Positions 1 to 26,898 of a stretch of 28,042 nucleotides of DNA are shown piece by piece. The notes beneath the pieces are model-generated. The model was not told where the DNA came from. It was given only the letters and a program-made list of their open reading frames with translations, and made no database searches. Each line of letters opens with the position of its first letter. Position 1 is the stretch's first letter. Location: positions 1 to 28,042 of the forward strand of contig NIVC01005039.1 of assembly GCA_002269645.1 (NCBI GenBank), given 5' to 3'. Source of the stretch: Macrostomum lignano. Its lineage: Eukaryota. Made by a program: the position numbers and the translations under genes.

Positions 1-346
1 CATGTTTATCGCTTTTTCTTGCCAAGCTTCAAGAAACTTTTCGCTATTATATTTGTACGAGCGTAGAATAAAGCCAATTGTGTCCTGAACTCGTGTAGAA
101 ACTTTTCAACTCTTTACCTTTTCAACTTCTCAGATGTCATTTCTGTTTTTTTGCCGACACTCCATAAGGAGGGCGACAATTTTATGATGCCGATTCTGTC
201 ATTGAAGAAAAAACCGTCACAACTTTATCCTCTATTTAATGAGAGCCCCAATCGAGACAGCTTCCTACTAGCTATTTAGCCGTGGGAAAACGGTACTCAG
301 TTGGAAAGCATTCAATACTTCAAATTTCCTACAGCAAAATGTTCCC

Positions 347-1186
347 ATGTTCAACTCCGTGCGATTGTTCCCCTGCTGCTGCCGCTGCTGCTGCTGACTC
401 GGCCCGCGACCTGCTGCAGGCAGCGAGTCGCCTTCCACCCGATCCTCACCTCGAACTGCGTGTCCCCAGCTCACTACCAGCTGCTCGACTTTGACATCGC
501 GGCCTGTGCGCTTCGCTGCGGAGCGGCTCCGAGATGCAGAGCCTTCGCCATGGAGGCTGCGGCCGCCTCGGACCGGCAGCTCTGCCTGCTGTTCGCCTTC
601 GATGCCTGCAGCTCGCAGCTGCTGCTCGATCCCGGCTCGTGGAGCGGCGGCTGCCTCAGCAGGAGGCTTCGAGTCTTCGTCAAGCAGTCGGAGGGTCTCG
701 AGCCGGGCCGACTCTGTCCCGTCGACTATCGCTGGGTGCCTGGCGTCAGCGGCAGCCCGCTTCAAGGGTTCGCTGTACAAGGCTGCTGGGAGCGGGCAGG
801 TGGCCGACTGGAGCGCTCAGGCCGTCAGCTGCCGGAGCTTCCTGACCACCTCGGACAGGTCCGCCATGCCGCTGACGAAGCTCGCCCACCTGAGCAGCGT
901 CGAGGAGCTCCAGGATGTGAGGGCGTCAATTGGCCTGACTGGCAGCCAAAGGATCTGGGTGGGCGCCTCGATTCTTGGCAACGGCAGCTGGGCGTGGGCG
1001 GACTGCGGCTGGCCGCTGCCGCTGCTGGACGTTGACAGCGGCGGATTGTGGAAGTCTGGCAAGCCGAACTCCAAGGATGACGTTAGATTTCGTGGCAGAA
1101 TTTCGGACTCTGCGTTGACCGACTTTGATTATGCAGACCCCTTTCGCGGAGCTTGTGAATGCCTTGATCCATTCATCGAACTTTGA
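347..1186 (+). pseudogene. Secreted PAN/apple + C-type lectin-like (CTLD) protein, copy A; frameshifted as assembled
   Basis: Frame 301 gives a Leu-rich signal (LLLPLLLLTRPATC) and PAN-type cysteines (CALRCGAAPRCRAF...LCLLF). An extra C at 756-758 (ggcagcccgc vs ggcagccgc in B and C) shifts into frame 491, which carries CTLD motifs (WSAQAVSC, LAHLSSVEE, IWVGA, WAWAD, LWKSGKPN, GACEC) to the stop at 1186. There is no in-frame ATG before the signal; ATG 347 joins only if one C is added in the run at 370-373. Confidence 0.8.
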
Positions 1187-1700
1187 AACATTTTGCGTAA
1201 ACTGCGTTGCAAAATGAATTTTTTTGTAGTGTGTGGTACGCAGGATGAATGAGAAACTTGTATCGCGTGAAAATGGACCTATTATTACTTGGTACTCCTA
1301 ATTATAAACCAGTGCAATTAAACCTGATTAGAATGGCAGAACATGAAGAGTTCCTATCTACGCCCGTAGTTAATTTTGTGAGCTTTTTCTTTGTGGCTTT
1401 TGCTTTTAAAAATGCCCAATTTTCCCTGCAATTTTTATCTATAATTAAAACCGTAATCATCTTTCTAGCAGTTGATATTTTTATGTCCCGGAAGTTTCCA
1501 CCAACCACTTTATTAAACCGAAGTTGTTTCAACTAATTGAAAGCAATAAATACTATTTTGTTGGAGCTCTGTAAGAGCGGGTCTAAATTGTAACTTAATA
1601 TACCGTTTTTGCAATTGTTTTGTTGCTTCTTTCTAGTACAAAGGGGTTGTTAAATGCAAAATGTTCTGGACTGTGTTTACTCTCAGTCAGTTTACTCTCA

Positions 1701-1870
1701 GGGGGTGTGGCCTAGTGGTTTGAGCGTCGGACTCACGACACTGGAAGGTCGGGGGTTCGATTCTCGACCCAGTCGGAACAATTTGTGTCCTTCAGCAAGA
1801 CACTTAACTCTGCATTGCTTCAGTTCACTCAGCTGTAAAATGGGTGCCAGCATTAGCTGGGGTAACTGAG
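1701..1870 (+). mobile_element. tRNA-derived SINE with CORE (MIR-like) central domain; 3' end uncertain, may extend to ~2000
   Basis: Pol III A box TGGCCTAGTGG at 1708-1718 and B box GGTTCGATTC at 1754-1763. These are followed by TGTGTCCTTCAGCAAGACACTTAACTCTGCATTGCTTCAGTTCACTCAGCTGTAAAATGGG (1784-1844), which resembles the recalled MIR core TGTGACCTTGGGCAAGTCACTTAACCTCTCTGAGCCTCAGTTTCCTCATCTGTAAAATGGG. Confidence 0.75.
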
Positions 1871-2239
1871 GGTGTGTGTGGCGACCCCCCAGTCCTTGGA
1901 CTGAACAGCCGTACGCAGTCTTCAGATGCGCCCCGCAGTAGCTGCGGCTGAGCTGTCGGTTGCACATCTGTGCCTATCATCTGTGCACACCATTTGCTTA
2001 ACTCTTAATGCATATGAATAGTATATTGTTTGAGTTCGCGGCGCTTCTGCAGCGTCGCCACGTGCTTACCTACGACTGCCTTTAGTCCTTTAGAAGCAGT
2101 GAGGTTTTTCACCCTGTATGACACAACTTTTTTTCAAAGACCCTGACATGGTATTTTTGTAGTTGTGTTGAGTTGCATTAATTGTTGGTTAAGTTTATTG
2201 AGTGCAAAACTTAATACTTGCGTTCAACCTAATTGAATC

Positions 2240-2714: not shown

Positions 2715-4016
2715 CGAGTGGTTGTCAGGAAAGTTCTGTGTATTAGAGAATAGCTCAGCTCTATGAACAAATGAAGAGTTGGGGTTTTAGCCATAGACAT
2801 ATACATATATAAAGAGTCGCTAGCTTCAGTTTTAGAGCACCAGATCATTTCTAGCCTGTGTTAGCAGTAATTTTTCAACCACACCCATGGCGCATTCCGT
2901 CCCGCGAGAGAGTTTTTCTAAACGCGACAATCGAGCGATCATCAAGTTTCATGTCCTTCAGGGGCGTACAGCAACCGAGATTTTTGAAGAAATGCGGCAG
3001 ACCATAGGAGACCATAGCAACGGCAAAGAAGACCTCGACGACAAGCCACGCAGTGGACGACCAACGAGTGCTCGGACTGACAGCCTGGTGAGTCAGGTGG
3101 AGGCAGCCGTGCTGCAGGACCGGAGACTGACCACCAGGCAGCTGGCTGATGCCACAGGGGTGTCCCACGACTCAGTCCACAAGATCCTGACCGAGGACCT
3201 TGGGATGCGCAAGGTCTGTGCCAAGTGGGTGCCGCATCTGCTCACTGACGATCAGCGGGCTCGGCGGGTCGCCATGTGCGCATCCAACCTGCAGCGGTGT
3301 CGGCGGGAGGGCATGGCGTTCCTGCAAAGGATCGTTGCCTGCGACGAAACCTGGGCGCATTTTTGGGAGGCGGAGTTGAAGCGGCAGAGTGCCACATGGT
3401 GCAGGCCAGGTTCTCCGCGACCTCAAAAGGCCATCCGGAGCATCGGCCAGCTGAAGGTCATGCACGTGACTTTCTTCGACCGGGAGGGTCTGTTGTTCGA
3501 TCAGCCTGTGCCAGTGGGGCAGACGGTCAATGGTGATTTCTACCTGTGGGTTCTGGTGAAAGGTCGGCGTGCCATTCGGGACAAAAGGCCTGCACTTCAC
3601 GCGGCTGGCCCGATTCTGCTTCACGACAACGCAGCCCCGCACCGAAAGCAAAGCGTGCTGGCTACGATCGAGTCGTGGGGGTGGGAAATTCTTCCGCATC
3701 CGCCTTATTCCCCGGACTTAAGTCCATGCGACTTTTTCCTCTTCCCTCGCATCAAGCAGTCGATGGGGGGCCAGCGTTTCAGTGCAGAGAAAGACGTGAA
3801 TCGGGCCTAACAAGGCTGGCATTGCCGCCGTGACGAACAATGGCATGACTACAGGCATTGACGGGCTGGTGCGGCGTTGGGAGAAGTGCATTGAAGCTGA
3901 GGGCTCATACTTTGAGTGAATAGATGTTAAGGAAGACATTTGTAACTTTTAATGTTTCTGCTGATTATCGTTCTCAAGTTATTACAATATACACAGAACT
4001 TTTCTGACAACCCTCA
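2715..4016 (+). mobile_element. Tc1/mariner DNA transposon (mariner, DD34D), ~1.3 kb
   Basis: Imperfect ~28-bp TIRs: cgagtggttgtcaggaaagttctgtgtat (2715-2743) and atacacagaacttttctgacaaccctca (3989-4016). TA at 4017-4018; the left flank reads TT. Contains a transposase ORF. Confidence 0.93.
2887..3919 (+). pseudogene. Mariner transposase, frameshifted near the C-terminus
   Basis: Motifs PRSGRP, WVPHLL, CDETW, HDNAAPH and HPPYSPDLSPCDF, with 34 residues between the 2nd and 3rd catalytic Asp. The ORF stops at 3810, but the +1 frame continues ...GIDGLVRRWEKCIEAEGSYFE* to 3919. Confidence 0.92.
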
Positions 4017-4882
4017 TAAAATAAGCACTATTCCGAGTATACTAGCATCTGACAACAAAGGGCGCTCCGACCGGTAGGTCTGGGATTTTAATACGCTCGT
4101 GTGATATTTTGCAGTTTAAAATTTACTGTAAAACTTGGGGAACCTGGCTATAATCCTCAACTTTTTCCTGTTGATTTATGTTACCTTGGTTACCGCGCCC
4201 ACTTCAGGCACACGATATTGGGTGCATTCTTCCCCGTATTCCGCATCTGGCCCTTGCACCACCTCCCAATATAGCTATAATTCTCTTCTGAGCTTCAATT
4301 GACGGGTCCAAAACTAAACAAGCTGCCGCAATTGCAATGTCCTTGATCAGTGGTCCTTGATTTATTTATCCTTGAACTTGACCAAGCTCCCTTGAATCAA
4401 ACGGGGAAAAAGTGAGATATTCTTACTGTGCTGCCTTGACGCTCTCTCGTACTGCTTCAGCTTAAAAGAGATGATGCAAATTCAGCGCATAGATCTAGAG
4501 TTCGTTTTTTAGCGACATTCAGCCGCTCATGCCTTTGCGGGTGCCTGCAACTGCATACATGTAGCTTATTCTAGCCACCATTTTTAGACCCATTATCTCT
4601 GAACTGCAGTAGAATATCCGGTAGCTATACAGCCTCGAATGTCAATAAAAATCACAATTCGCTAAAAGCATGCAGGTGAAATGATCAACACAAGCGATAT
4701 GTAGCTATACATGTATTCTCTGAGATATAGATGGTTGTCAGTCAACGCATAAAAGCTTTCTTGAAGCGAAATTTACATTTCTGTTCATTTTTCCAAATTT
4801 TTGTTGTCAATAGTGATAGAAGTTAGAGTTGGAGGTTTTTCGGAGTTCAAGTCATCGGTCCTATGCATCTATAATTTCAGAG

Positions 4883-7800
4883 AATCGGTCCAATATGACA
4901 AATTTCTAAGAATCGGTCCAATATGACAAATTTCTAAGAATCGGTCCAATATGACAAATTTCTAAGAATCGGTCCAATATGACAAATTTCTAAGAATCGG
5001 TCCAATATGACAAATTTCTAAGAATCGGTCCAATATGACAAATTTCTAAGAATCGGTGTTATATAGCAGCTTTCTAAGAATCGGTCCTATGTAGCAACTT
5101 TCTAAGAATCGGTCCTATATAGAAACTATCTAAGAATCGGTATTATGTAGCAACTTTCTAAGAATCGGTCCTATGTAGCAACTTTCTTAGAATCGGTCTT
5201 ATATAGAAACTTTCTAAGAATCGGTCCTATGTAGCAACTTTCTAAGAATCGGTCCTATATAGAAACTTTCTAAGAATCGGTCCTATGTAGCAACTTTCTA
5301 AAAATCGATCCTATATAGAAACTTTCTAAGAATCGGTCCTATGTAGCAACTTTCTAAGAATCGGTCCTATGTAGCAACTTTCTAAAAATCGGTCCTATAT
5401 AGAAACTTTCTAAGAATCGGTCCTATGTAGCAACTTTCTAAAAATCGGTCCTATGTAGCAACTTTCTAAGAATCGGTCCTATATAGAAACTTTCTAAGAA
5501 TCGGTCCTATGTAGCAACTTTCTAAAAATCGGTCCTATATAGAAACTTTCTAAGAATCGGTCCTATGTAGCAACTTTCTTAGAATCGGTCTTATATAGAA
5601 ACTTTCTAAGAATCGGTCCTATGTAGCAACTTTCTTAGAATCGGTCCTATATAGAAACTTTCTAAGAATCGGTCCTATGTAGCAACTTTCTAAGAATCGG
5701 TCCTATATAGAAACTTTCTAAGAATCGGTTCTATGTAGCAACTTTCTAAGAATCGGTCTTATATAGAAACTTTCTAAGAATCGGTCCTATGTAGCAACTT
5801 TCTTAGAATCGGTCCTATATAGAAACTTTCTAAGAATCGGTTCTATGTAGCAACTTTCTTAGAATCGGTCTTATATAGAAACTTTCTAAGAATCGGTCCT
5901 ATGTAGCAACTTTCTAGAATCGGTCCTATATAGAAACTTTCTAAGAATCGGTCCTATGTAGCAACTTTCTAAGAATCGGTCCTATATAGAAACTTTCTAA
6001 GAATCGGTCCTATGTAGCAACTTTCTAAGAATCGGTCCTATATAGAAACTTTCTAAGAATCGGTCCTATGTAGCAACTTTCTAAGAATCGGTCCTATGTA
6101 GCAACTTTCTAAGAATCGGTCCTATATAGAAACTTTCTAAGAATCGGTCCTATGTAGCAACTTTCTAAGAATCGGTCCTATATAGAAACTTTCTAAGAAT
6201 CGGTCCTATGTAGCAACTTTCTAAGAATCGGTCCTATGTAGCAACTTTCTAAAATCGGTCCTATATAGAAACTTTCTAAGAATCGGTCCTATGTAGCAAC
6301 TTTCTAAAATCGGTCCTATGTAGCAACTTTCTAAGAATCGGTCCTATATAGAAACTTTCTAAGAATCGGTCCTATGTAGCAACTTTCTAAAAATCGGTCC
6401 TATATAGAAACTTTCTAAGAATCGGTCCTATGTAGCAACTTTCTAGAATCGGTCCTATATAGAAACTTTCTAAGAATCGGTCCTATGTAGCAACTTTCTA
6501 GAATCGGTCCTATATAGAAACTTTCTAAGAATCGGTCCTATGTAGCAACTTTCTAAGAATCGGTCCTATATAGAAACTTTCTAAGAATCGGTTCTATGTA
6601 GCAACTTTCTAAGAATCGGTCTTATATAGAAACTTTCTAAGAATCGGTCCTATGTAGCAACTTTCTTAGAATCGGTCCTATATAGAAACTTTCTAAGAAT
6701 CGGTTCTATGTAGCAACTTTCTTAGAATCGGTCTATATAGAAACTTTCTAAGAATCGGTCCTATGTAGCAACTTTCTAGAATCGGTCCTATATAGAAACT
6801 TTCTAAGAATCGGTCCTATGTAGCAACTTTCTAAGAATCGGTCCTATGTAGCAACTTTCTAAGAATCGGTCCTATATAGAAACTTTCTAAGAATCGGTCC
6901 TATGTAGCAACTTTCTAAGAATCGGTCCTATATAGAAACTTTCTAAGAATCGGTCCTATGTAGCAACTTTCTAAGAATCGGTCCTATATAGAAACTTTCT
7001 AAGAATCGGTCCTATGTAGCAACTTTCTAAGAATCGGTCCTATGTAGCAACTTTCTAAGAATCGGTCCTATATAGAAACTTTCTAAGAATCGGTCCTATG
7101 TAGCAACTTTCTAAGAATCGGTCCTATGTAGCAACTTTCTAAGAATCGGTCCTATGTAGCAACTTTCTTAGAATCGGTCTTATATAGAAACTTTCTAAGA
7201 ATCGGTCCTATGTAGCAACTTTCTTAGAATCGGTCCTATATAGAAACTTTCTAAGAATCGGTCCTATGTAGCAACTTTCTAAGAATCGGTCCTATATAGA
7301 AACTTTCTAAGAATCGGTCTATGTAGCAACTTTCTAAGAATCGGTCTTATATAGAAACTTTCTAAGAATCGGTCCTATGTAGCAACTTTCTTAGAATCGG
7401 TCCTATATAGAAACTTTCTAAGAATCGGTTCTATGTAGCAACTTTCTTAGAATCGGTCTTATATAGAAACTTTCTAAGAATCGGTCCTATGTAGCAACTT
7501 TCTTAGAATCGGTCCTATATAGAAACTTTCTAAGAATCGGTCCTATGTAGCAACTTTCTAAGAATCGGTCCTATATAGAAACTTTCTAAGAATCGGTCCT
7601 ATGTAGCAACTTTCTAAGAATCGGTCCTATGTAGCAACTTTCTAAGAATCGGTCCTATATAGAAACTTTCTAAGAATCGGTCCTATGTAGCAACTTTCTA
7701 AAATCGGTCCTATGTAGCAACTTTCTAAGAATCGGTCCTATATAGAAACTTTCTAAGAATCGGTCCTATGTAGCAACTTTCTAAAATCGGTCCTATATAG

Positions 7801-10800
7801 AAACTTTCTAAGAATCGGTCCTATGTAGCAACTTTCTAGAATCGGTCCTATATAGAAACTTTCTAAGAATCGGTCCTATGTAGCAACTTTCTAGAATCGG
7901 TCCTATATAGAAACTTTCTAAGAATCGGTCCTATGTAGCAACTTTCTAAGAATCGGTCCTATATAGAAACTTTCTAAGAATCGGTCCTATGTAGCAACTT
8001 TCTAAGAATCGGTCTATATAGAAACTTTCTAAGAATCGGTCCTATGTAGCAACTTTCTTAGAATCGGTCCTATATAGAAACTTTCTAAGAATCGGTCTAT
8101 GTAGCAACTTTCTTAGAATCGGTCTATATAGAAACTTTCTAAGAATCGGTCCTATGTAGCAACTTTCTTAGAATCGGTCCTATATAGAAACTTTCTAAGA
8201 ATCGGTCCTATGTAGCAACTTTCTAAGAATCGGTCCTATGTAGCAACTTTCTAAGAATCGGTCCTATATAGAAACTTTCTAAGAATCGGTCCTATGTAGC
8301 AACTTTCTAAGAATCGGTCCTATATAGAAACTTTCTAAGAATCGGTCCTATGTAGCAACTTTCTAAGAATCGGTCCTATATAGAAACTTTCTAAGAATCG
8401 GTCCTATGTAGCAACTTTCTAAGAATCGGTCCTATGTAGCAACTTTCTAAGAATCGGTCCTATATAGAAACTTTCTAAGAATCGGTCCTATGTAGCAACT
8501 TTCTAAGAATCGGTCCTATGTAGCAACTTTCTAAGAATCGGTCCTATGTAGCAACTTTCTAGAATCGGTCCTATATAGAAACTTTCTAAGAATCGGTCCT
8601 ATGTAGCAACTTTCTAGAATCGGTCCTATATAGAAACTTTCTAAGAATCGGTCCTATGTAGCAACTTTCTAAGAATCGGTCCTATATAGAAACTTTCTAA
8701 GAATCGGTCTATGTAGCAACTTTCTAAGAATCGGTCCTATATAGAAACTTTCTAAGAATCGGTCCTATGTAGCAACTTTCTAGAATCGGTCCTATATAGA
8801 AACTTTCTAAGAATCGGTCCTATGTAGCAACTTTCTAGAATCGGTCCTATATAGAAACTTTCTAAGAATCGGTCCTATGTAGCAACTTTCTAGAATCGGT
8901 CCTATATAGAAACTTTCTAAGAATCGGTCCTATGTAGCAACTTTCTAAGAATCGGTCCTATATAGAAACTTTCTAAGAATCGGTCCTATGTAGCAACTTT
9001 CTAAGAATCGGTCCTATATAGAAACTTTCTAAGAATCGGTCCTATGTAGCAACTTTCTAAGAATCGGTCCTATGTAGCAACTTTCTAAGAATCGGTCCTA
9101 TATAGAAACTTTCTAAGAATCGGTCCTATGTAGCAACTTTCTAAGAATCGGTCCTATATAGAAACTTTCTAAGAATCGGTCCTATGTAGCAACTTTCTAA
9201 GAATCGGTCCTATGTAGCAACTTTCTAAAAATCGGTCCTATATAGAAACTTTCTAAGAATCGGTCCTATGTAGCAACTTTCTAAGAATCGGTCCTATGTA
9301 GCAACTTTCTAAGAATCGGTCCTATATAGAAACTTTCTAAGAATCGGTCCTATGTAGCAACTTTCTAAATCGGTCCTATATAGAAACTTTCTAAGAATCG
9401 GTCCTATGTAGCAACTTTCTTAGAATCGGTCCTATATAGAAACTTTCTAAGAATCGGTCCTATGTAGCAACTTTCTAAGAATCGGTCCTATATAGAAACT
9501 TTCTAAGAATCGGTCCTATGTAGCAACTTTCTAAGAATCGGTCCTATATAGAAACTTTCTAAGAATCGGTCCTATGTAGCAACTTTCTAAGAATCGGTCC
9601 TATATAGAAACTTTCTAAGAATCGGTCCTATGTAGCAACTTTCTTAGAATCGGTCCTATATAGAAACTTTCTAAGAATCGGTCCTATGTAGCAACTTTCT
9701 TAGAATCGGTCCTATATAGAAACTTTCTAAGAATCGGTCCTATGTAGCAACTTTCTTAGAATCGGTCCTATATAGAAACTTTCTAAGAATCGGTCCTATG
9801 TAGCAACTTTCTAAGAATCGGTCCTATATAGAAACTTTCTAAGAATCGGTCCTATGTAGCAACTTTCTAAGAATCGGTCCTATATAGAACTTTCTAAGAA
9901 TCGGTCCTATGTAGCAACTTTCTAAGAATCGGTCCTATGTAGCAACTTTCTAAGAATCGGTCCTATGTAGCAACTTTCTAAGAATCGGTCCTATGTAGCA
10001 ACTTTCTAAGAATCGGTCCTATGTAGCAACTTTCTAAGAATCGGTCCTATGTAGCAACTTTCTAAGAATCGGTCCTATATAGAAACTTTCTAAGAATCGG
10101 TCCTATGTAGCAACTTTCTAAGAATCGGTCCTATATAGAAACTTTCTAAGAATCGGTCCTATGTAGCAACTTTCTAAGAATCGGTCCTATATAGAAACTT
10201 TCTAAGAATCGGTCCTATGTAGCAACTTTCTAAGAATCGGTCCTATATAGAAACTTTCTAAGAATCGGTCCTATGTAGCAACTTTCTAAGAATCGGTCCT
10301 ATGTAGCAACTTTCTAAGAATCGGTCCTATGTAGCAACTTTCTAAGAATCGGTCCTATGTAGCAACTTTCTAAGAATCGGTCCTATGTAGCAACTTTCTA
10401 AGAATCGGTCCTATATAGCAACTTTCTAAGAATCGGTCCTATATAGAACTTTCTAAGAATCGGTCCTATATAGCAACTTTCTAAGAATCGGTCCTATATA
10501 GAAACTTTCTAAGAATCGGTCCTATATAGAAACTTTCTAAGAATCGGTCCTATGTAGCAACTTTCTAAGAATCGGTCCTATATAGAAACTTTCTAAGAAT
10601 CGGTCCTATATAGCAACTTTCTAAGAATCGGTCCTATAGCTTTCTAAGAATCGGTCCTATATAGAAACTTTCTAAGAATCGGTCCTATATAGCAGCTTTC
10701 TAAGAATCGGTCCTATATAGAAACTTTCTAAGAATCGGTCCTATATAGAAACTTTCTAAAAATCGGTCCTATATAGAAACTTTCTAAGAATCGGTCCTAT

Positions 10801-10968
10801 ATAGCAACTTTCTAAGAATCGGTCCTATATAGAAACTTTCTAAAAATCGGTCCTATATAGAAACTTTCTAAAAATCGGTCCTATATAGAAACTTTCTAAA
10901 AATCGGTCCTATATAGAAACTTTCTAAAAATCGGTCCTATATAGAAACTTTCTAAAAATCGGTCCTAT
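4883..10968. repeat. Satellite array of 28-bp units, ~217 copies
   Basis: Main units are AATCGGTCCTATGTAGCAACTTTCTAAG and AATCGGTCCTATATAGAAACTTTCTAAG, mostly alternating. Six divergent units (AATCGGTCCAATATGACAAATTTCTAAG) lie at 4883-5050. Confidence 0.98.
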
Positions 10969-11582: not shown

Positions 11583-12436
11583 TCAAAAATACGAAAAAGG
11601 GTCGATGCATTCGCAGGCTCCGTAGAACTTGTATTTACCAGACCAATCAAACAAGACGGTGCTGAAAATCCTGGCTCGGATAATGGGATGTTTTTCTTCG
11701 TTGGGATTACCGGGACCCCATAATCCGCCGCTGTCAGCGTCCAGCAGCGGCAGCGGCCAGCCGCAGTCCGCCCACGCCCAGCTGCCGTTGCCAAGAATCG
11801 AGGCGCCCACCCAGATTTGCTGGTTGCTGCCAGTCAGGCCAGTTGACGCCCTCACATCCTGGAGCTCCTCGACGCTGCTCAGGTCGGCGAGCTTCGTCAG
11901 CGGCATGGCGGACCCGTCCGAGTTGGTCAGGAAGCTCCGGCAGCTGACGGCCTGAGCGCTCCAGTCGGCCACCTGCCCGCTCCCAGCAGCCTTGTACAGC
12001 GAGCCCTTGAAGCGGCTGCCGCTGACGCCAGGCACCCAGCGATAGTCGACGGGACAGAGTCGGCCCGGCAATCGAGACCCTCCGACTGCTTGACGAAGAC
12101 TCGAAGCCTCCTGCTGAGGCAGCCGCCGCTCCACGAGCCGGGATCGAGCAGCAGCTGCGAGCTGCAGGCGTCGAAGGCGAACAGCAGGCAGAGCTGCCGG
12201 TCTGAGGAGGCGGCAGCAGCTTCCATGGCGAAGGCTCTGCATCTCGGAGCCGCTCCGCAGCGAAGCGCACAGGCCGCGATGTCAAGGTCGAGCAGCTGGT
12301 AGTGAGCTGGGGACACGCAGTTCGAGGTGAGGATCGGGTGGAAGGCGACTCGCTGCCTGCAGCAGCTCAAGGGGCGGCTCAGCAGCAGTAGTAGCAACAG
12401 TAACGTGTTTGTGTACTTGCATCTATTTGACGACAT
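11583..12436 (-). pseudogene. Secreted PAN/apple + CTLD protein, copy B (283 aa if a 2-nt insertion is removed)
   Basis: ATG at 12436 and signal peptide MSSNRCKYTNTLLLLLLLLSRPLSC, then the PAN domain. An AA insertion at 12070-12071 relative to A and C shifts the frame. The CTLD continues in ORF 11583-12242 to GACECIDPFSYF*. (854-2)/3 = 284 codons including the stop. Confidence 0.85.
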
Positions 12437-12700: not shown

Positions 12701-13277
12701 GGTTGAGACTTTCATACGCAGAAACATGCATGTACGATCTAGTGCATTTATTTTACCGATAATTCTTAGTTTAAATGCACTCCAAGTTGAAGACTGTCTT
12801 ATAAATTATGTACAGATCCAATCTTTTCTAGTTAAACTTGGATGTTTTCAAAAAAGAGGCATCGAAATTATGTGTCATTTTTGGGCGTAAAATAATCTTA
12901 AAATCCATTTTCACATAGTGGGATAACGGGGAGAAATGTAAACTCCCAACTGACAGGAGGGTACTCAGATTCTTAGATGCGACACAACATTTCGGTCTCA
13001 GAGACGAGTGGGTCAGGTTTCTCGATTTTGTAATCCCTGGCCTGGCCTTAAATCTGCTAAGATTTCAATAATGCATCCGCTAGTAATGACTGTTCTGTGG
13101 ATTGTGCAGGTCTGCTTTTTAACTTTTTACCTTTTCAACTTCTCAGGTATCGTTTCTGCTTTTTCCGAAGCTTGATGCTGTTAGTCTGTCATCGAAGATG
13201 ACAAATTTAATTAGAATACGAATAGTTAAATGTGTCTATTTATAATCAGCTCTCTTAAAGCTGAGAAGCACTAGATA

Positions 13278-13740
13278 GAGATGCAGAGCCTTCGCCATGG
13301 AAGCTGCTGCCTCCTCGGACCGGCAGCTCTGCCTGCTGTTCGCCTTCGACGCCTGCAGCTCGCAGCTGCTGCTCGATCCCGGCTCGTGGAGCGGCGGCTG
13401 CCTCAGCAGGAGGCTTCGAGTCTTCGTCAAGCAGTCGGAGGGTCTCGAGCCGGGCCGACTCTGTCCCGTCGACTATCGCTGGGTGCCTGGCGTCAGCGGC
13501 AGCCGCTTCAAGGGTTCGCTGTACAAGGCTGCTGGGAGCGGGCTGGTGGCCGACTGGAGCGCTCAGGCCGTCAGCTGCCGGAGCTTCCTGACCACCTCGG
13601 ACGGGTCGCCATGCCGCTGACGAAGCTCGCCCACCTGAGCAGCGTCGAGGAGCTCCAGGATGTGAGGGAGTCAACTGGCCTGACTGGCAGTCAAAACTAC
13701 GAAACTAGTACGGAGCCTGCGAATGCATCGCGACCCTTTT
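13278..13740 (+). pseudogene. PAN + CTLD copy C: 5'-truncated, frameshifted, internally deleted
   Basis: Homology starts mid-PAN at gagatgcagagcc. One C is missing at ~13607 (gggtcgcc vs gggtccgcc). After ctggcag (13690) come 18 nt of filler, then 22 nt identical to the 3' end of B (tacggagcctgcgaatgcatcg, 13709-13730). Confidence 0.85.
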
Positions 13741-15897: not shown

Positions 15898-18800
15898 CTG
15901 TACATTATTTTTGTACATTAGCAACCATGTAGAATTAAAAACACAAATGACTCACCTTCAGGCAGACGTAGGTACTCAGACTGCTTCCTAATAAACTCGG
16001 CGATCATCTCTTTGCGCAGTTCGAATGCTCGCATGTTTGCAATAAATGTGCTGAAAAATGGAGTTTGTGAGTATAAACATGATCTTTTTATCCGATTAAT
16101 GTGGCCCTGTGTAGTGTTGAAAACCCTATTTTAACTGTATTATCTGCTAACACTGGGCACAACCGATCAGTGCACACCGCTGCTTGGCAGGCCATCAACC
16201 AGCTGACGGGCAGAAGGCCCAGGCCCAGCGCAGTTCTCGGCGCGGACTCCATCCAGCACCGCAAAGCCCAGCTGGTCTCGCACTACAGCGACGTGCTCAA
16301 CGCCCCTGATCCAGCCGCTTCACTGTTACCGATGCCCAATTCACCCCTGCCAACCATGACTCCTTCAACACTGGCTCTATCTTTTCACAGGAAGTTGGTC
16401 GGGCCTTAAAGAAAGATATGCGCGCTGATGCCGCCTCGGAGGTACATTTCCCTTTCGATTCCCCTTTCAAACGATTCCTCCTCGAAAGGTCCTGAAGCTT
16501 CCCGAGTTAACCGGCCCCTGCCGGGTAACCAGCCTGCCTTGGAGGGCACTGCAGTCTTGGAGGCGACGCGGCTGCATGTGCCCCACCACAATGACGCACC
16601 TCCAAGATCCTATAGATCCCAAAGAAGAGGGCCTCTACGTACCAGGATGGACAACCAACGTGGCATCGCACTGGAGTGCACCATGGCGAAGCTGTCGCGA
16701 CCCAGCTGCTGCCCAACGCGTTCTTTCCCGAGGGCGCCCGGGTGGGGCTGGTGGTCAACGCGCGCAAGACGGAGGTGATAATCGTGGGCACTGGCACCGC
16801 CCCTGCACTTGCGCTGCCCAGCGGACTTCCTCCTCTCACCCTCTCTCACCCTCTCCGCTCTCACTGTCTACCGTCTTTATCCCGCAAGTTTTACTTACTT
16901 CAAGTGCCCCAATGCAATGTGACTATTTTGATTTTGACGCTGTACATCCCTGGAATTTACATAAAAATTGATTTTTAGGCCAATCTGTTAATTGAAATAT
17001 CTCGGAAGAATCGGAATTAAGATTTGTATTGACAAAAAATCAAACTTACCGTATTTGTCGATCACCCTGAACTGTGATAATAAAAGCGGCATTCCAAAAT
17101 CTGAGCGACTGCCAAATTGGTTGGTCCTTGACGAAACTGCGCAAGTAGAGCTTGTGCGCCTGGCCGGACTCGGTTGTGGCTGCAATTAGCCATTTTCGCT
17201 TATTTAGCTACTAACAGTAGATATACGAGAATCGGCATTGTAATTTATTCACATATGCTAGAATAACTACCGGTGGATACGTGACTCGCAGAAAATGTGC
17301 TTATCTAATCTTTTCAGTAGCAAAACTAGCGTTTCTGTATTATATTAGTACAAAAGCAAAACATTTTAACTTTTTAAGCTGCAACCAGCGACTTAGGCCT
17401 TTTAAAAGCAGAACAATTAAATTAGCAGACTAAAGTAGCTTTGCAGCAAGGGAGAAAAGGGGTTGCTTTCACAAGCTCGAAATTTCACAACCTCGAAACC
17501 AGTTACTTTCATAAGCTCGAAATTTCATAAGCTCGAAATTTCACAACCTCGAAAACCATTTTAGCAGCCACTTTCACCAACCCGAAACTTCATAAGCTCG
17601 AAATTTCACAAGCTCGAAAATGTACTGTATTTGTATTTTTCACACTAGCTGTAAGTTTTTTGGGCTTCTTATCTACTGAGAATTTATTTGCTGATTTTCG
17701 AGGTTGTGAAATTTCGAGCTTGTGAAGTCGGCTGCTAAAATGGTTTTCGAGGTTGTGAAATTTCGAACTTATGAAGCCAGCTGCTAAAATTTCGAGGATA
17801 TGAAATTTCGAGCTTATGAAGTTTCGGGTTTGTGAAAGGAAGTGCTTTTCGAGGTTGCGAAATTTCGAGCTTGTGAAGCGACCCCGAGAAAAGGAGTAGT
17901 GCCAAGCTCTACTAGCTAGGCCGATAAACAAGTTTGGCTGTTCTCTTGCCCTATCCGATTGTGTCTGACTTTAACCTCTCTCCTTACTGCTCTCTCATTG
18001 GCTGAGCTAGATTGGGCCTGCCCCCCTAGACTGAGTTTCGTCCGTCTGACTTTAACCTCTCTCCTTACTGCTTTCTCATTGGCTGAGTTAGCTTGGGTCC
18101 GCCCCCTACGCCGAGTGTCGTCCGTCTTGCGTTCACTTGTGTACATTAAGTTAGATTCTTCTTGTTCCTTCTCTTATCCCCATTTGCTCCTGAGTCCTGG
18201 GGCCGCAAGCTCCGGGGAAGAAAATGAAATTTTAGCTGCCACATTAATTTTTAGGGACTGTAGTTATCTACTAATTTAGGTAGCATTAAACGCATCTTCA
18301 GTCTATCATCTTCAATACTCACCGGAATAATAGTAGGTGAAGCAGGCGGTCATCAGTGCGCACGCAGTCTGCCAGTCATCCGCTTCGTTGCATTCGTAGA
18401 GAGCCACAGCAACTGCCTGTACAGCGGCGAAGAAGCTCTGCTCCTCTAGGCGCTCGGATCTGCCTCTCTGGCTGACGAGATTCTTGGCTAGCCAGGCTCG
18501 GCCAGTTGATTTCTGGGCCGAAAAGTTGCGGTGGATTGGTTTGTTAATGCCCGTTTTGTAGCGCTTTCTTGATGATGCGGTGTGTCTCCAAAGGGGTATC
18601 TTGTGAAGGATGCTGTGTGTGTCTGGGGGGGGGGTAGCTTGTGGAGGATGTTGTGTGTGTCTGAGGTTAGCTTGAGGAAGATGCAGTGTGTCTAAAGGGG
18701 TAGCTTGTAAAGGATGCACAAGGACTACTCAGGTAACATATATATAGGACGCTACACTCGAAATCTGTGGTAAATGTTTTGACTGCAACTTTTCGCCGAA

Positions 18801-21674
18801 AAATACTGTACAGAGATAGGAGATTTTTTTTCAGCACAAAAATTGTTATTGCTTTTGATAGGAGGCAGATCCAGTGTTCATCTTTTGATATGTTGTGCCT
18901 TTCTTATTTCTTATATTTGTTCCTCACATGCAGCTCTAACGACGCATTAATCGATTTTTCATGTTAAATTGGTCTTGTCATTATTTTAATCGTTTTTTTC
19001 AAGTGACAGACCAATTTATTAACATGAAAAATCGATTAATGCGTCGTTAGAGCAGCATGTGAGGCACAAATAGTGTGATTAGGACTTTCTCTGACACTGT
19101 TAAGAGACCCAATCACTGTTTTAGTGTTGAAAATTGTGAAATTTCCTATCTCCATAGTGTATTTTTCCGGTGACACCGCTGCCTTTAAAACTATTTCTGA
19201 ACGAAAAGCTTTATGAATATCGATAGGCAATAAGAAAGGCACAAAATATCAAAGATGAACACTGGATCTGCCTCCTATCAAAAGCAATAACAATTTTTGT
19301 GCTAAAAAAATGAAAACCTCCTATCTCTGTAGTGTATTTTTCGGCGAAAAGCTGCCTTCAAAACATTTACCATAGATTTCGAGTGTTGCGTCCTTCTACT
19401 TAAGTTGTCCTTGAGGATGCAGTGTGTGTCTTAATATAACATTGATACCCGAAAAGGGACACTTGAGCTAAGAAAAGCTAAGCGTTAGCTTGTCAAGGAT
19501 GCAGCAGTGTGTCAAGGAGGTAGCTTGTGAAGGATGCAGCAGTGTGTCAAAAGGTATCTTGTGGAGGATGCAGCAGTGTGTCAAGAGGTAGCTTGTGAGG
19601 ATGCAGCATTGTGTCAAAGAGGTAGCTTGTGGAGGATGCAGCATTGTGTCAAAGAGGTAGCTTGTGAGGATGCAGCATTGTGTCAAAGAGGTAGCTTGTG
19701 GAGGATGCAGCATTGTGTCAAAGAGGTAGCTTGTGGATTGCAACGGTGTTTGTCAGAGTACATGCCTTTGCTATGTGTTCCAATTCCGCTGGAAACTAAG
19801 TATAGGAATGAGAGATGTAGTTAGGGGGGGTGAGAAGAGTGGTATAGTGATTGGTAGGGTAAGAGACACAGGGGTAAGAATGTCGAGAGGTGGATGGAGG
19901 GTTAGGAGCAACAATTGTGGTGGTGTAGATCCTCTCCGCCTTTCCCGTGTCTAATTGACGTAGAAATAAAACTCCAAAACGGCCACAAATCTACGAACTC
20001 ATAGAGAATGCAATTTTCTGCTAAATATCGTTCAGAATTAGGCAGCCAGTCTGTATCTTTTGTGAAGTACTTTTGCTCAATCTAATCCAGACAGACAGGC
20101 TGGTGTGGGTGGGGGGAGAGTTGCTGAATAAATCGCCGAAGTAATTCCACCGAACTCGTGGCTCTCAATCACGATTCTCTCGATTCTATCACAGACCGAG
20201 TGTACCGACTGTTGGGAAGTCGCTGCACTCAATCTCGACAATTGAGATCCCACCCAACCGTTCCCTTGGGAGGGAGAAGAGAAGAAGGGAATCGAGGGAG
20301 AAGCAAAATAAGAAACTGAAAAATAGAAGACGAGCGAGCCAAGAAAGATCAGAAGCTGTCGTCAGGCTGAAACGTATCAGAGAAGGATTCTCTCAGCAAG
20401 TTACTTTCTTCCAGATTCCGGCTTGAATCTTATTAAGAAAGGAAAATCCAATGAGAAAGGAAAATGAGGGGCGATGACTGATCAGTGTTGACGAAGGATC
20501 TTCTTTCAACCAGTTTGGTTTTTAAAAAAAATCCAATCTCATGTCGACTTCAATGCGTTATTTCACATCTCTAAGAGACCTGACATAAGAGACCTGATAT
20601 ATGAGACCTGATATATGAGACCTGACATATGAGACCTGATATATGAGACCTGATATATGAGACCTGACATAAGAGACCTGATATATGAGACCTGATATAT
20701 GAGACCTGACATAGGAGACCTGATATATGAGACCTGATATATGAGACCTGATGTGATGAGACCTGATATATGAGACCTGAGATATGAGACCTGAGATATT
20801 AGACCTGAGAAATGAGACTCGAGATAGGAGACCTGAGATATAAGACCCGAGATATAAGAGATGAGAATCGGATATTACAAGATTGTCTTTGGCCAACATT
20901 TTCCAGAAGAATGAAGATTAGAAATGAGGATATATATGCATGAACAAGTTCGTTTGTATCGTTCAGATCTGAGCAACTCTGCGGTAAATTCGTCCGACTC
21001 TCGCGCCACGACCCCTGGAGTGTGTGCCTGATGCATACAGTATTTGCGCGCTGGTTGTGGGACGAGGTCGCCTAAAGCGTTGCGCCAGGTGCCAAAATTA
21101 CGGCACATGTAATCTGCCGATTGTGCAGGTACTCGTCCATGAGGCAAACGTCATTGCGCAAAGTTTGCATACTGGCTGACACATTTTAGGTAGTTTGGCA
21201 TTCGACAGCTTTCTGGATGTTACTTCTCAAGGCAGACTTACCTGACAATAGTCTCCGAATACCTCCGTGTCTTCGGGCGTTATGCTCTGCCTAAAATTTA
21301 TATCGGAATCATTAGGCTAATACGGTATAGATGCTGCAGATTCCATCACCTGGCACCTGACACCTGGATGTTTCCATCCACTGACACCTGGCTGTTTCCA
21401 TCATTTGACACCTGGCTGTTTCCATCCCCTGACAACTGGCTGTTTCCATCATTTGACACCTGGCTGTTTCCAGCACCGACACCTGGCTGTTTTCATCACC
21501 TGACACCTGGCTGTTTCCATCCCCTGACAATGCATTCTAGCAGATTTTACTTTAACATTCCAGTAGGCTATGATTAGTTATACTCACCCTTGGTTGAACA
21601 TCATACTAACGTAGCGAGTCATAAAGTCACGGCATTGTTTAGCTTCTGCATCGTTCATATCTGTCGTTTGCTGC

Positions 21675-21706
<32 letters not shown>

Positions 21707-25848: not shown

Positions 25849-25932
<84 letters not shown>
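25849..25932. repeat. (AC)42 microsatellite
   Basis: Uninterrupted AC run. Confidence 0.97.

Positions 25933-26527: not shown

Positions 26528-26898
<371 letters not shown>

What the first reader, a model, noticed from the sequence alone, without database searches (positions are those of the whole stretch)
1051..1186. Secreted PAN-CTLD paralogs with a constant scaffold and a sharply bounded, same-length hypervariable ligand-binding tail
Seen: from CCRQR to GGLW, copies A and B differ at only ~8-9 of ~215 residues. Immediately after ggcggatt(g/a)tgg (A 1050, B 11720) identity falls to 17/44 aa with no gaps, and to 6/26 between PN and GACEC. Synonymous positions also differ there and the sequence becomes visibly less GC-rich. 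The EPN-equivalent is KPN vs NPN, the WND-equivalent is LTD vs LFD, and the inner CTLD disulfide is missing in both. Known: this segment forms the long loop and beta3-beta4 binding surface of C-type lectin folds. Inference: a recognition-protein family (immune, adhesive or reproductive) whose scaffold is homogenised by conversion or recent recombination, while old or swapped binding cassettes are kept. The layout is conceptually like DGR CLec targets, but in an animal.
Basis: partly seen in the sequence, partly recalled or inferred. Interest (0 to 1): 0.75.

Follow-up and report, generated by a model that had tools for sequence, protein, structure and literature searches.

The report
Patchy gene conversion between lectin-like paralogs
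Two old, neighbouring copies of a lectin-like gene had their middle 640 bases recently overwritten to near-identity by gene conversion while both ends stayed ancient, a known and fairly ordinary pattern, and as assembled all copies have broken reading frames.

Summary
The sharp step is real. Copies A (339-1186, +) and B (12436-11583, -) differ at 15 of 636 bases from A411 to A1047. Elsewhere in the coding span they differ at 100 of 210 (Fisher p about 1e-53). The 3' break lies within 1047-1051, at GGLW.

- There is an equally sharp 5' break at A408-413, the signal-peptide/mature junction.
- Non-coding flanks on both sides are unalignable.
- GC3 is 84% inside the tract and 48-52% in the tails.
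- Every copy is frame-broken: A has +1 at 756-758 and no in-frame ATG, B has +2 at 12070-12071, and the fragment C has -1 near 13607.

The tails are homologous: 17/44 residues, no gaps, same stop. Their synonymous sites are saturated (pS 0.82, pN 0.42). They are old and unconverted, not shown to be hypervariable.

Best reading: mosaic concerted evolution by GC-biased non-allelic gene conversion in a small, possibly decaying cluster.

The window holds no template repeat, no adenine bias and no spare tail cassettes. The PAN and CTLD assignments are weak: Pfam Lectin_C finds nothing, and solved CTLDs match at E of about 0.01.

No relatives turned up in any collection, so family-wide claims are untested.

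The parts
339..411 (+). Copy A, signal-peptide-like region. It is diverged from B. The ATG at 339 is 73 nt before CCRQR, so it is out of frame, and there is no in-frame ATG.
411..1051 (+). Copy A, homogenised GC-rich tract from CCRQR to GGLW (PAN-like plus most of the CTLD-like domain). It is 97.6% identical to B, with GC 67% and GC3 84%. It contains a +1 frameshift (extra C) in the run at 756-758.
1052..1186 (+). Copy A, unconverted tail: 44 codons plus the stop at 1184-1186. It runs KSGKPN...LTD...GACECLDPFIEL, with GC 48%.
12365..12436 (-). Copy B, ATG and signal peptide (MSSNRCKYTNTLLLLLLLLSRPLS), 72 nt, diverged from A.
11718..12364 (-). Copy B, homogenised tract from CCRQR to GGLW. It contains a +2 frameshift: TT on the coding strand, AA at 12070-12071 on the + strand.
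11583..11717 (-). Copy B, unconverted tail: 44 codons plus stop. It runs GPGNPN...LFD...GACECIDPFSYF, with GC 45%.
13278..13695 (+). Copy C, a fragment of the homogenised tract (equivalent to A531-950). It is 97-99% identical to A and B and has a private -1 frameshift near 13606-13607.
13709..13740 (+). Copy C, a remnant of the tail end (YGACECI..DPF). It is B-type: identical to B apart from a 2-nt insertion. The stretch equivalent to A951 to about 1146 is deleted.
13115..13200 (+). Copy C, upstream flank homologous to A's upstream flank (A102-208; 88% over 50 nt). The equivalent of A 209-530 or so is missing.

Best explanation
A, B and the fragment C are members of a small, lineage-restricted cluster of single-exon genes. 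Each once encoded a secreted protein made of a PAN/apple-like module and a divergent C-type-lectin-like domain.

A and B are old duplicates. Their signal peptides, C-terminal 44 codons and non-coding flanks have diverged to saturation. They lie tail to tail, 10.4 kb apart.

A central tract of about 640 bp, from the first residue of the mature protein to GGLW, has been overwritten between copies by non-allelic gene conversion. This probably happened repeatedly and with a GC bias. The result is about 97.6% identity and unusually high GC3 (84%).

The sharp edges are the ends of the conversion tract. Once the flanks have diverged, conversion cannot start or extend into them, so the edges keep themselves sharp. 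The tail is the part that conversion does not reach. It is not a region that is actively diversified.

Since the last homogenisation each copy has gained a few private changes, including its own frameshift. Either the cluster is now decaying into pseudogenes, or the assembly carries indel errors.

Shown: the breakpoints, the homology of the tails, the GC step and the frameshifts. Inferred: recurrence of conversion, GC bias as the cause of the step, self-sharpening of the edges, and the former function.
For: - The maximum-likelihood low-divergence segment is A411-1047, with 15/636 mismatches against 100/210 outside it. 2dlnL = 240 and Fisher p = 1e-53. The 3' edge resolves to 1047-1051 and the 5' edge to 408-413.
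- Inside the tract 7 codons differ synonymously and 7 non-synonymously, so synonymous sites are homogenised too.
- The tail has pS 0.82 (saturated) and pN 0.42, no gaps and the same stop position. tblastn of one tail against the other gives E = 5e-11.
- A and B flanks outside the coding sequence give no significant blastn match.
- GC3 is 84% in the tract, 48-52% in the tails and 58-68% in other ORFs of the window. Flank GC is 34-39%.
- Raised GC3 in the converted parts of mosaic paralog pairs, with stable boundaries, is a documented signature (PMC2720389).
- Each frameshift is private to one copy, so the last shared sequence was intact.
- The top matches among solved structures are all CTLDs: langerin E = 0.009, CLEC4F E = 0.024.
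Against: - Only two full copies and one fragment are available, and no orthologues or further paralogs were found. Recurrence and stability of the boundary are therefore inferred from base composition alone.
- With three sequences the private-change pattern fits a simple star tree. It does not itself prove repeated exchange.
- Private changes run 8 strong-to-weak against 3 weak-to-strong, which does not differ significantly from expectation at 67% GC (my count).
- Selection could also have helped keep the tail distinct.
- C combines an A-type upstream flank with a B-type tail remnant. This hints at exchanges that do not respect the A/B boundary.
Confidence: 0.7

Rival explanations
1. Selection for different binding specificities keeps the tails (long loop, beta3-beta4) distinct by removing convertants. 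The scaffold is free to be homogenised. This is a 'peak of divergence' maintained against conversion, as proposed for the red and green opsin genes, and is essentially the first reader's model.
For: - The 3' edge falls exactly at W-x-x-G-x-P-N, the start of the segment that forms the Ca2+/ligand site in classical CTLDs (alignment to langerin).
- The tails kept frame, length and core residues over a saturating divergence.
- The model is established in theory and in other gene pairs (PMC3924837).
Against: - The signal-peptide side shows an equally sharp edge and the non-coding flanks are also unconverted. No special explanation is needed for the tail.
- pN is below pS, so there is no sign of positive selection. 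dS is saturated, so omega cannot be estimated.
- The canonical sugar and Ca2+ ligands are absent (KPN/NPN, LTD/LFD).
- All copies are frame-broken as assembled.
Confidence: 0.15
2. A single recent patch replacement. One conversion or double-crossover event copied a GC-rich 640-bp segment from one paralog, possibly one outside the window, into the others. There is no long-term recurrent conversion and no GC-biased fixation.
For: - A, B and C are roughly equidistant, with about 5-6 private changes each. That fits one recent burst.
- The tract length is typical of single conversion events (general knowledge).
Against: It does not explain why the donor gene itself would have GC3 of 84% up to GGLW and about 50% after it. 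Both A and B show the same compositional step at the same codon.
Confidence: 0.15
3. A recent whole-gene duplication followed by targeted hypermutation or cassette replacement of the tail: DGR-like, or somatic/germline cassette shuffling.
For: The sharp, in-frame, same-length replacement resembles the variable regions of such systems. C pairs an A-type upstream flank with a B-type tail remnant.
Against: - The flanks outside the coding sequence are also unalignable, so the recent event did not include the whole gene.
- The window holds no extra tail-like sequence.
- All 12 substitution types occur, with no adenine bias.
- Synonymous sites are saturated, as expected from age.
- No reverse-transcriptase domain was found in the ORFs scanned.
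Confidence: 0.03
4. Assembly or polishing artefact: cross-mapped reads made the paralogs look identical in the middle.
For: Three of the four frameshifts are length changes in C runs, the commonest long-read error.
Against: - Polishing cannot turn about 45% identity into 97.6% over 640 bp with edges sharp to a single codon.
- The copies keep private substitutions and in-frame indels.
- A 474-codon, repeat-rich ORF elsewhere in the window is uninterrupted.
Confidence: 0.03

Closest known systems
Mosaic concerted evolution of paralog pairs by non-allelic, GC-biased gene conversion (for example DDX19A/B, TUBG1/2 and BMP8A/B in mammals; PMC2720389)
   Same: Part of the gene is kept near-identical between linked paralogs while other parts diverge. 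GC3 is raised in the converted part. Boundaries are sharp.
   Different: Here the gene is an orphan lectin-like gene from an unidentified, probably invertebrate, genome. The copies are inverted and interrupted by frameshifts. Conservation of the boundary across species could not be tested.
'Peak of divergence' maintained by selection against conversion (red/green opsin exon 5; reviewed in PMC3924837)
   Same: A short, functionally critical segment stays diverged inside an otherwise homogenised pair.
   Different: In this window the diverged segment lies at the end of the gene and runs on into unalignable flanks. Selection is therefore not needed to explain it.
Classical C-type lectin domains such as langerin (CLEC4K) and CLEC4F
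   Same: The WIGL-like strand, the G-x-W-x-W-x-D motif, W-x-x-G-x-P-N and the C-terminal C-E motif are in the same register. These are the best and only consistent hits among solved structures (E 0.009-0.04).
   Different: There is no Pfam Lectin_C match. The C2-C3 disulfide is absent. EPN is replaced by KPN/NPN and WND by LTD/LFD, so Ca2+-dependent sugar binding is unlikely. An N-terminal PAN-like module is attached.
DGR variable CLec-fold targets (for example Bordetella phage Mtd)
   Same: Variability would map to the C-terminal part of a C-type-lectin-like fold.
   Different: There is no template repeat, no adenine-specific pattern and no reverse transcriptase here. The divergence is ancient rather than generated.

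Membership tests
C-type lectin-like domain (Pfam Lectin_C, PF00059) | Significant match to the family profile | tested here: not met
   No Lectin_C hit even at E <= 10, for full-length or domain-only queries of A and B.
C-type lectin-like domain (Pfam Lectin_C, PF00059) | Sequence similarity to solved CTLD structures | tested here: inconclusive
   All of the best PDB hits are CTLDs but they are weak: langerin E = 0.009, CLEC4F E = 0.024, CLEC9A E = 0.09-0.27; the A+B profile hits langerin at E = 0.037.
C-type lectin-like domain (Pfam Lectin_C, PF00059) | Motif register: CP..W, W..A...C, WIGL, G.W.W.D, W..G.PN, C-E | tested here: met
   Read directly from the translation and consistent with the HMMER alignments to langerin. 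The consensus itself is from general knowledge.
C-type lectin-like domain (Pfam Lectin_C, PF00059) | Canonical C2-C3 disulfide and Ca2+ site 2 ligands (EPN/QPD, WND) | tested here: not met
   The only tail cysteines are in GACEC. The motifs are KPN/NPN and LTD/LFD.
C-type lectin-like domain (Pfam Lectin_C, PF00059) | CTLD fold | tested here: inconclusive
   The AlphaFold2 model from a 2-sequence alignment has mean pLDDT 31.9 and is unusable. No fold search was run.
PAN/apple domain | Match to PAN profiles above the curated cut-off | tested here: inconclusive
   PAN_4 E = 2.7e-4 (21.4 bits, cut-off 27). PAN_1 E = 1.3e-3 (18.9 bits, cut-off 21.4). PAN_2 E = 0.25. Three related families hit the same stretch, all below threshold.
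Mosaic concerted evolution by non-allelic gene conversion | A tract of significantly lower divergence than the rest of the homologous gene, with defined breakpoints | tested here: met
   15/636 against 100/210 mismatches, p = 1e-53. The edges are at 408-413 and 1047-1051.
Mosaic concerted evolution by non-allelic gene conversion | Synonymous sites homogenised inside the tract and diverged outside it | tested here: met
   7 synonymous codon differences in 214 codons inside the tract. pS is 0.82 in the tail.
Mosaic concerted evolution by non-allelic gene conversion | Raised GC3 in the converted tract (GC-biased conversion) | tested here: met
   GC3 is 84% in the tract, 48-52% in the tails and 58-68% in other ORFs.
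Mosaic concerted evolution by non-allelic gene conversion | Paralogs closer to each other than to their orthologues within the tract, with orthology preserved outside it | not testable with these tools
   No related sequence was found in any collection.
Diversity-generating retroelement target | A nearby template repeat nearly identical to the variable region | tested here: not met
   tblastn of both tails against all six frames of the window finds only the tails themselves and the C remnant.
Diversity-generating retroelement target | Differences confined to adenine positions | tested here: not met
   The 67 differences are spread over all 12 substitution types.
Diversity-generating retroelement target | Adjacent reverse transcriptase | tested here: not met
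   No RT domain in the 13 ORFs scanned with Pfam. Not every small ORF was scanned.
Cassette-based diversification (VLR, chicken pseudo-V, snail FREP type) | Arrays of silent donor cassettes flanking an expressed scaffold | tested here: not met
   None in the 28 kb window. The rest of the genome was not available.

The most novel reading that the evidence does not exclude
The cluster is part of a larger, lineage-specific family of secreted PAN-CTLD-like recognition proteins. In that family conversion keeps one scaffold uniform, and a fixed breakpoint at GGLW lets a limited set of old binding-loop 'cassettes' be retained and occasionally swapped between genes. C's A-type upstream flank joined to a B-type tail remnant hints at this. 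The frameshifts seen here would then be assembly errors or recent losses in a few members.
Probability: 0.1. Interest if true: 0.6.

Novelty: new member of a known kind. Interest (0 to 1): 0.3.

Why it matters
If confirmed with more copies and species, this would be a clean example of GC-biased non-allelic gene conversion in what is probably an invertebrate genome. The edges resolve to a single codon, and GC3 changes by about 35 points across them. That makes it useful as a teaching case, and as a warning that such mosaics can mimic 'hypervariable' regions or positive selection. It does not open a new mechanism. The gene family has no detectable relatives among 5.8 billion proteins, so it is of modest interest on its own, but all copies seen here are interrupted.

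Tried and rejected
- Homologue searches found nothing. These were the word-indexed search of 5.8 billion proteins, a full HMMER scan of 1.84 billion representatives, exact DNA patterns and back-translated patterns in the metagenome and prokaryote genome collections, and exact-product look-ups for three window ORFs.
- I tried to identify the organism from the mariner transposase. The nearest protein is only 65% identical, so the source genome is apparently not in the collections.
- AlphaFold2 on the CTLD-like part gave pLDDT 32, so no fold search was run.
- Pfam does not recognise a CTLD.
- Rfam and ARAGORN found nothing in the window.
- I first read C's alternating A-like and B-like sites as a conversion mosaic. 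I rejected this because, with three sequences, the pattern equals private changes on a star tree.
- Literature searches for PAN+CTLD families gave no matching family.

Full report
**What is there**

The window is eukaryotic and repeat-rich. It holds a mariner-type transposase ORF at 2887-3810, a 6.1-kb satellite with a 28-bp unit at 4854-10968, microsatellites, and a tRNA-like SINE head near 1690. Base GC is about 35%.

Three copies of a GC-rich unit lie within 14 kb:
- A, 339-1186 on the + strand.
- B, 12436-11583 on the - strand, tail to tail with A and 10.4 kb away.
- C, 13278-13695 on the + strand, head to head with B and 0.84 kb away. C is a fragment.

**Checking the observation**

- From CCRQR to GGLW there are 7 replacements and 2 single-codon indels in 214-215 residues.
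- After the shared TGG at A1049-1051, identity per 30-nt block falls from 93-100% to 40-47%.
- The 44-codon tails align without gaps and end at the same stop. 17/44 residues are identical, and 6/26 between PN and GACEC.
- A two-breakpoint likelihood scan over the coding span places the low-divergence segment at A411-1047, with 15/636 mismatches against 100/210 outside it. 2dlnL = 240 and Fisher p = 1.2e-53. The 3' edge resolves to 1047-1051.

Three things were missed.

First, there is a mirror-image 5' edge at A408-413. This is the first codon of CCRQR, the junction between the signal peptide and the mature protein.

Second, the frames are broken.
- A has an extra C in the run at 756-758.
- A's only nearby ATG (339) lies 73 nt before CCRQR, against 72 nt in B. 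A has no in-frame start codon.
- B has an extra TT at 12070-12071.
- C has a 1-nt deletion near 13607. It also lacks the equivalents of A209-530 and of A951 to about 1146.

Third, each frameshift is private to one copy. The last common sequence of the tract was therefore intact. Three of the four frameshifts are length changes in C runs. These could be real mutations or long-read assembly errors, and reads are needed to decide.

**What the encoded protein is**

B starts with a good signal peptide (MSSNRCKYTNTLLLLLLLLSRPLS), judged by eye.

The N-terminal module hits three PAN families on the same stretch, all below Pfam's cut-offs (best PAN_4, E = 2.7e-4).

The C-terminal module is not detected by Pfam Lectin_C at all. 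However, its best hits among solved structures are consistently C-type lectin domains: langerin E = 0.009, CLEC4F E = 0.024, CLEC9A E = 0.09-0.27. The alignments put IWVG on WIGL, GSWAWAD on G-W-W-D, and KPN on EPN. By eye, the full CTLD motif register is present.

It is a probable but very divergent CTLD. It lacks the C2-C3 disulfide and the canonical Ca2+/sugar ligands. AlphaFold2 gave an unusable model with pLDDT 32.

No relative was found in 5.8 billion proteins, in 1.84 billion representatives, or in the metagenome and prokaryote genome collections. The nearest mariner protein is only 65% identical. The source organism is evidently not represented, and no further paralogs could be collected.

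**How the pattern arose**

The tails are truly homologous (tblastn E = 5e-11) but ancient. pS is 0.82, which is saturated, and pN is 0.42.

Non-coding flanks of A and B give no significant match on either side. The recent event therefore involved only the roughly 640-bp tract, not the whole gene. That rules out a recent duplication followed by hypermutation of the tail.

Inside the tract, synonymous sites are as homogenised as replacement sites: 7 synonymous and 7 non-synonymous codon differences.

Base composition changes at the same two edges:
- Tract: GC 67%, GC3 84%.
- Tails: GC3 48-52%.
- Other ORFs in the window: GC3 58-68%.
- Flanks: GC 34-39%.

Raised GC3 confined to the converted part of a paralog pair, with stable boundaries, is a published signature of GC-biased gene conversion in mosaic concerted evolution (PMC2720389).

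Both A and B carry the compositional step at the same codon. This argues that the tract has been exchanged repeatedly over a long period with roughly the same limits, and was not copied just once.

The sharp edges follow naturally. Conversion needs homology, so once the flanks have diverged the tract cannot extend into them.

**What is not supported**

'Hypervariable' is not shown. There are two tails and a 32-nt remnant. Their divergence is what one expects of old paralogs under constraint, and the signal-peptide end behaves the same way.

Selection against conversion in the binding loops is a known model (PMC3924837). It is possible here but not needed.

The DGR analogy fails on every testable feature. 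There is no template copy, all 12 substitution types occur with no adenine bias, and no reverse transcriptase was found. The window holds no spare tail cassettes.

One loose end remains. C joins an A-type upstream flank (88% identity to A102-151) to a B-type tail remnant. Some exchanges therefore crossed the A/B boundary, or C has a compound history. I first took C's alternating A-like and B-like sites as a mosaic. With three sequences, that pattern is simply private changes on a star tree.

**Verdict**

The sequence observation is real and statistically overwhelming. It is best explained as ordinary mosaic concerted evolution by non-allelic, probably GC-biased, gene conversion in a small cluster of orphan lectin-like genes. 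As assembled, those genes are all interrupted.

It is a new instance of a known kind of pattern. Interest is modest unless genome-wide data reveal many copies sharing the same breakpoint with many different tails.

Noticed in passing
window 4854-10968: A 6.1-kb satellite of a 28-bp unit (ATCGGTCCTATGTAGCAACTTTCTAAGA): about 219 copies, 91% matches. It lies between copies A and B.
   Followed up: no
window 2887-3810 (+): A mariner/Mos1-type transposase ORF of 307 aa (Transposase_1, HTH_32, DDE_3). It stops about 50 aa short of its relatives (357 aa). The nearest protein in 5.8 billion is only 65% identical, so the source organism appears absent from the collections.
   Followed up: partly
window ~1688-1900 (+): A tRNA-like SINE head with A-box-like and B-box-like motifs (TGGCCTAGTGG ... 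GGTTCGATTCTCG), followed by a conserved-looking core. ARAGORN and Rfam do not call it.
   Followed up: partly
window 21584-24212 (-): Two long Gln/Pro-rich ORFs (474 aa and 206 aa) are separated by a 20-bp tandem repeat (22284-22749). They are probably two exons of one gene with a repeat-filled intron. There is no Pfam domain and no exact product on record.
   Followed up: partly
window 18746-19394: An inverted-repeat pair of about 140 nt (18746-18885 against 19251-19394, 90-98% complementary). This suggests a MITE or foldback element. It lies just before 35-bp tandem repeats at 19486-19737.
   Followed up: no
window 25849-25932 and 26528-26898: A perfect (AC)42 microsatellite and a (TGTC)93 array.
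   Followed up: no
window 13115-13200 and 13709-13740: Copy C combines an upstream flank related to A's (88%) with a tail remnant identical to B's, apart from a 2-nt insertion. This is either a compound history or an exchange that crossed the A/B breakpoint.
   Followed up: partly
window 411-1051 and 11718-12364: The PAN+CTLD-like protein has no detectable relative in two very large protein collections (E <= 0.001). It is an orphan or very fast-evolving family with a GC-rich, Ala/Gly/Ser/Leu/Arg-rich composition.
   Followed up: yes
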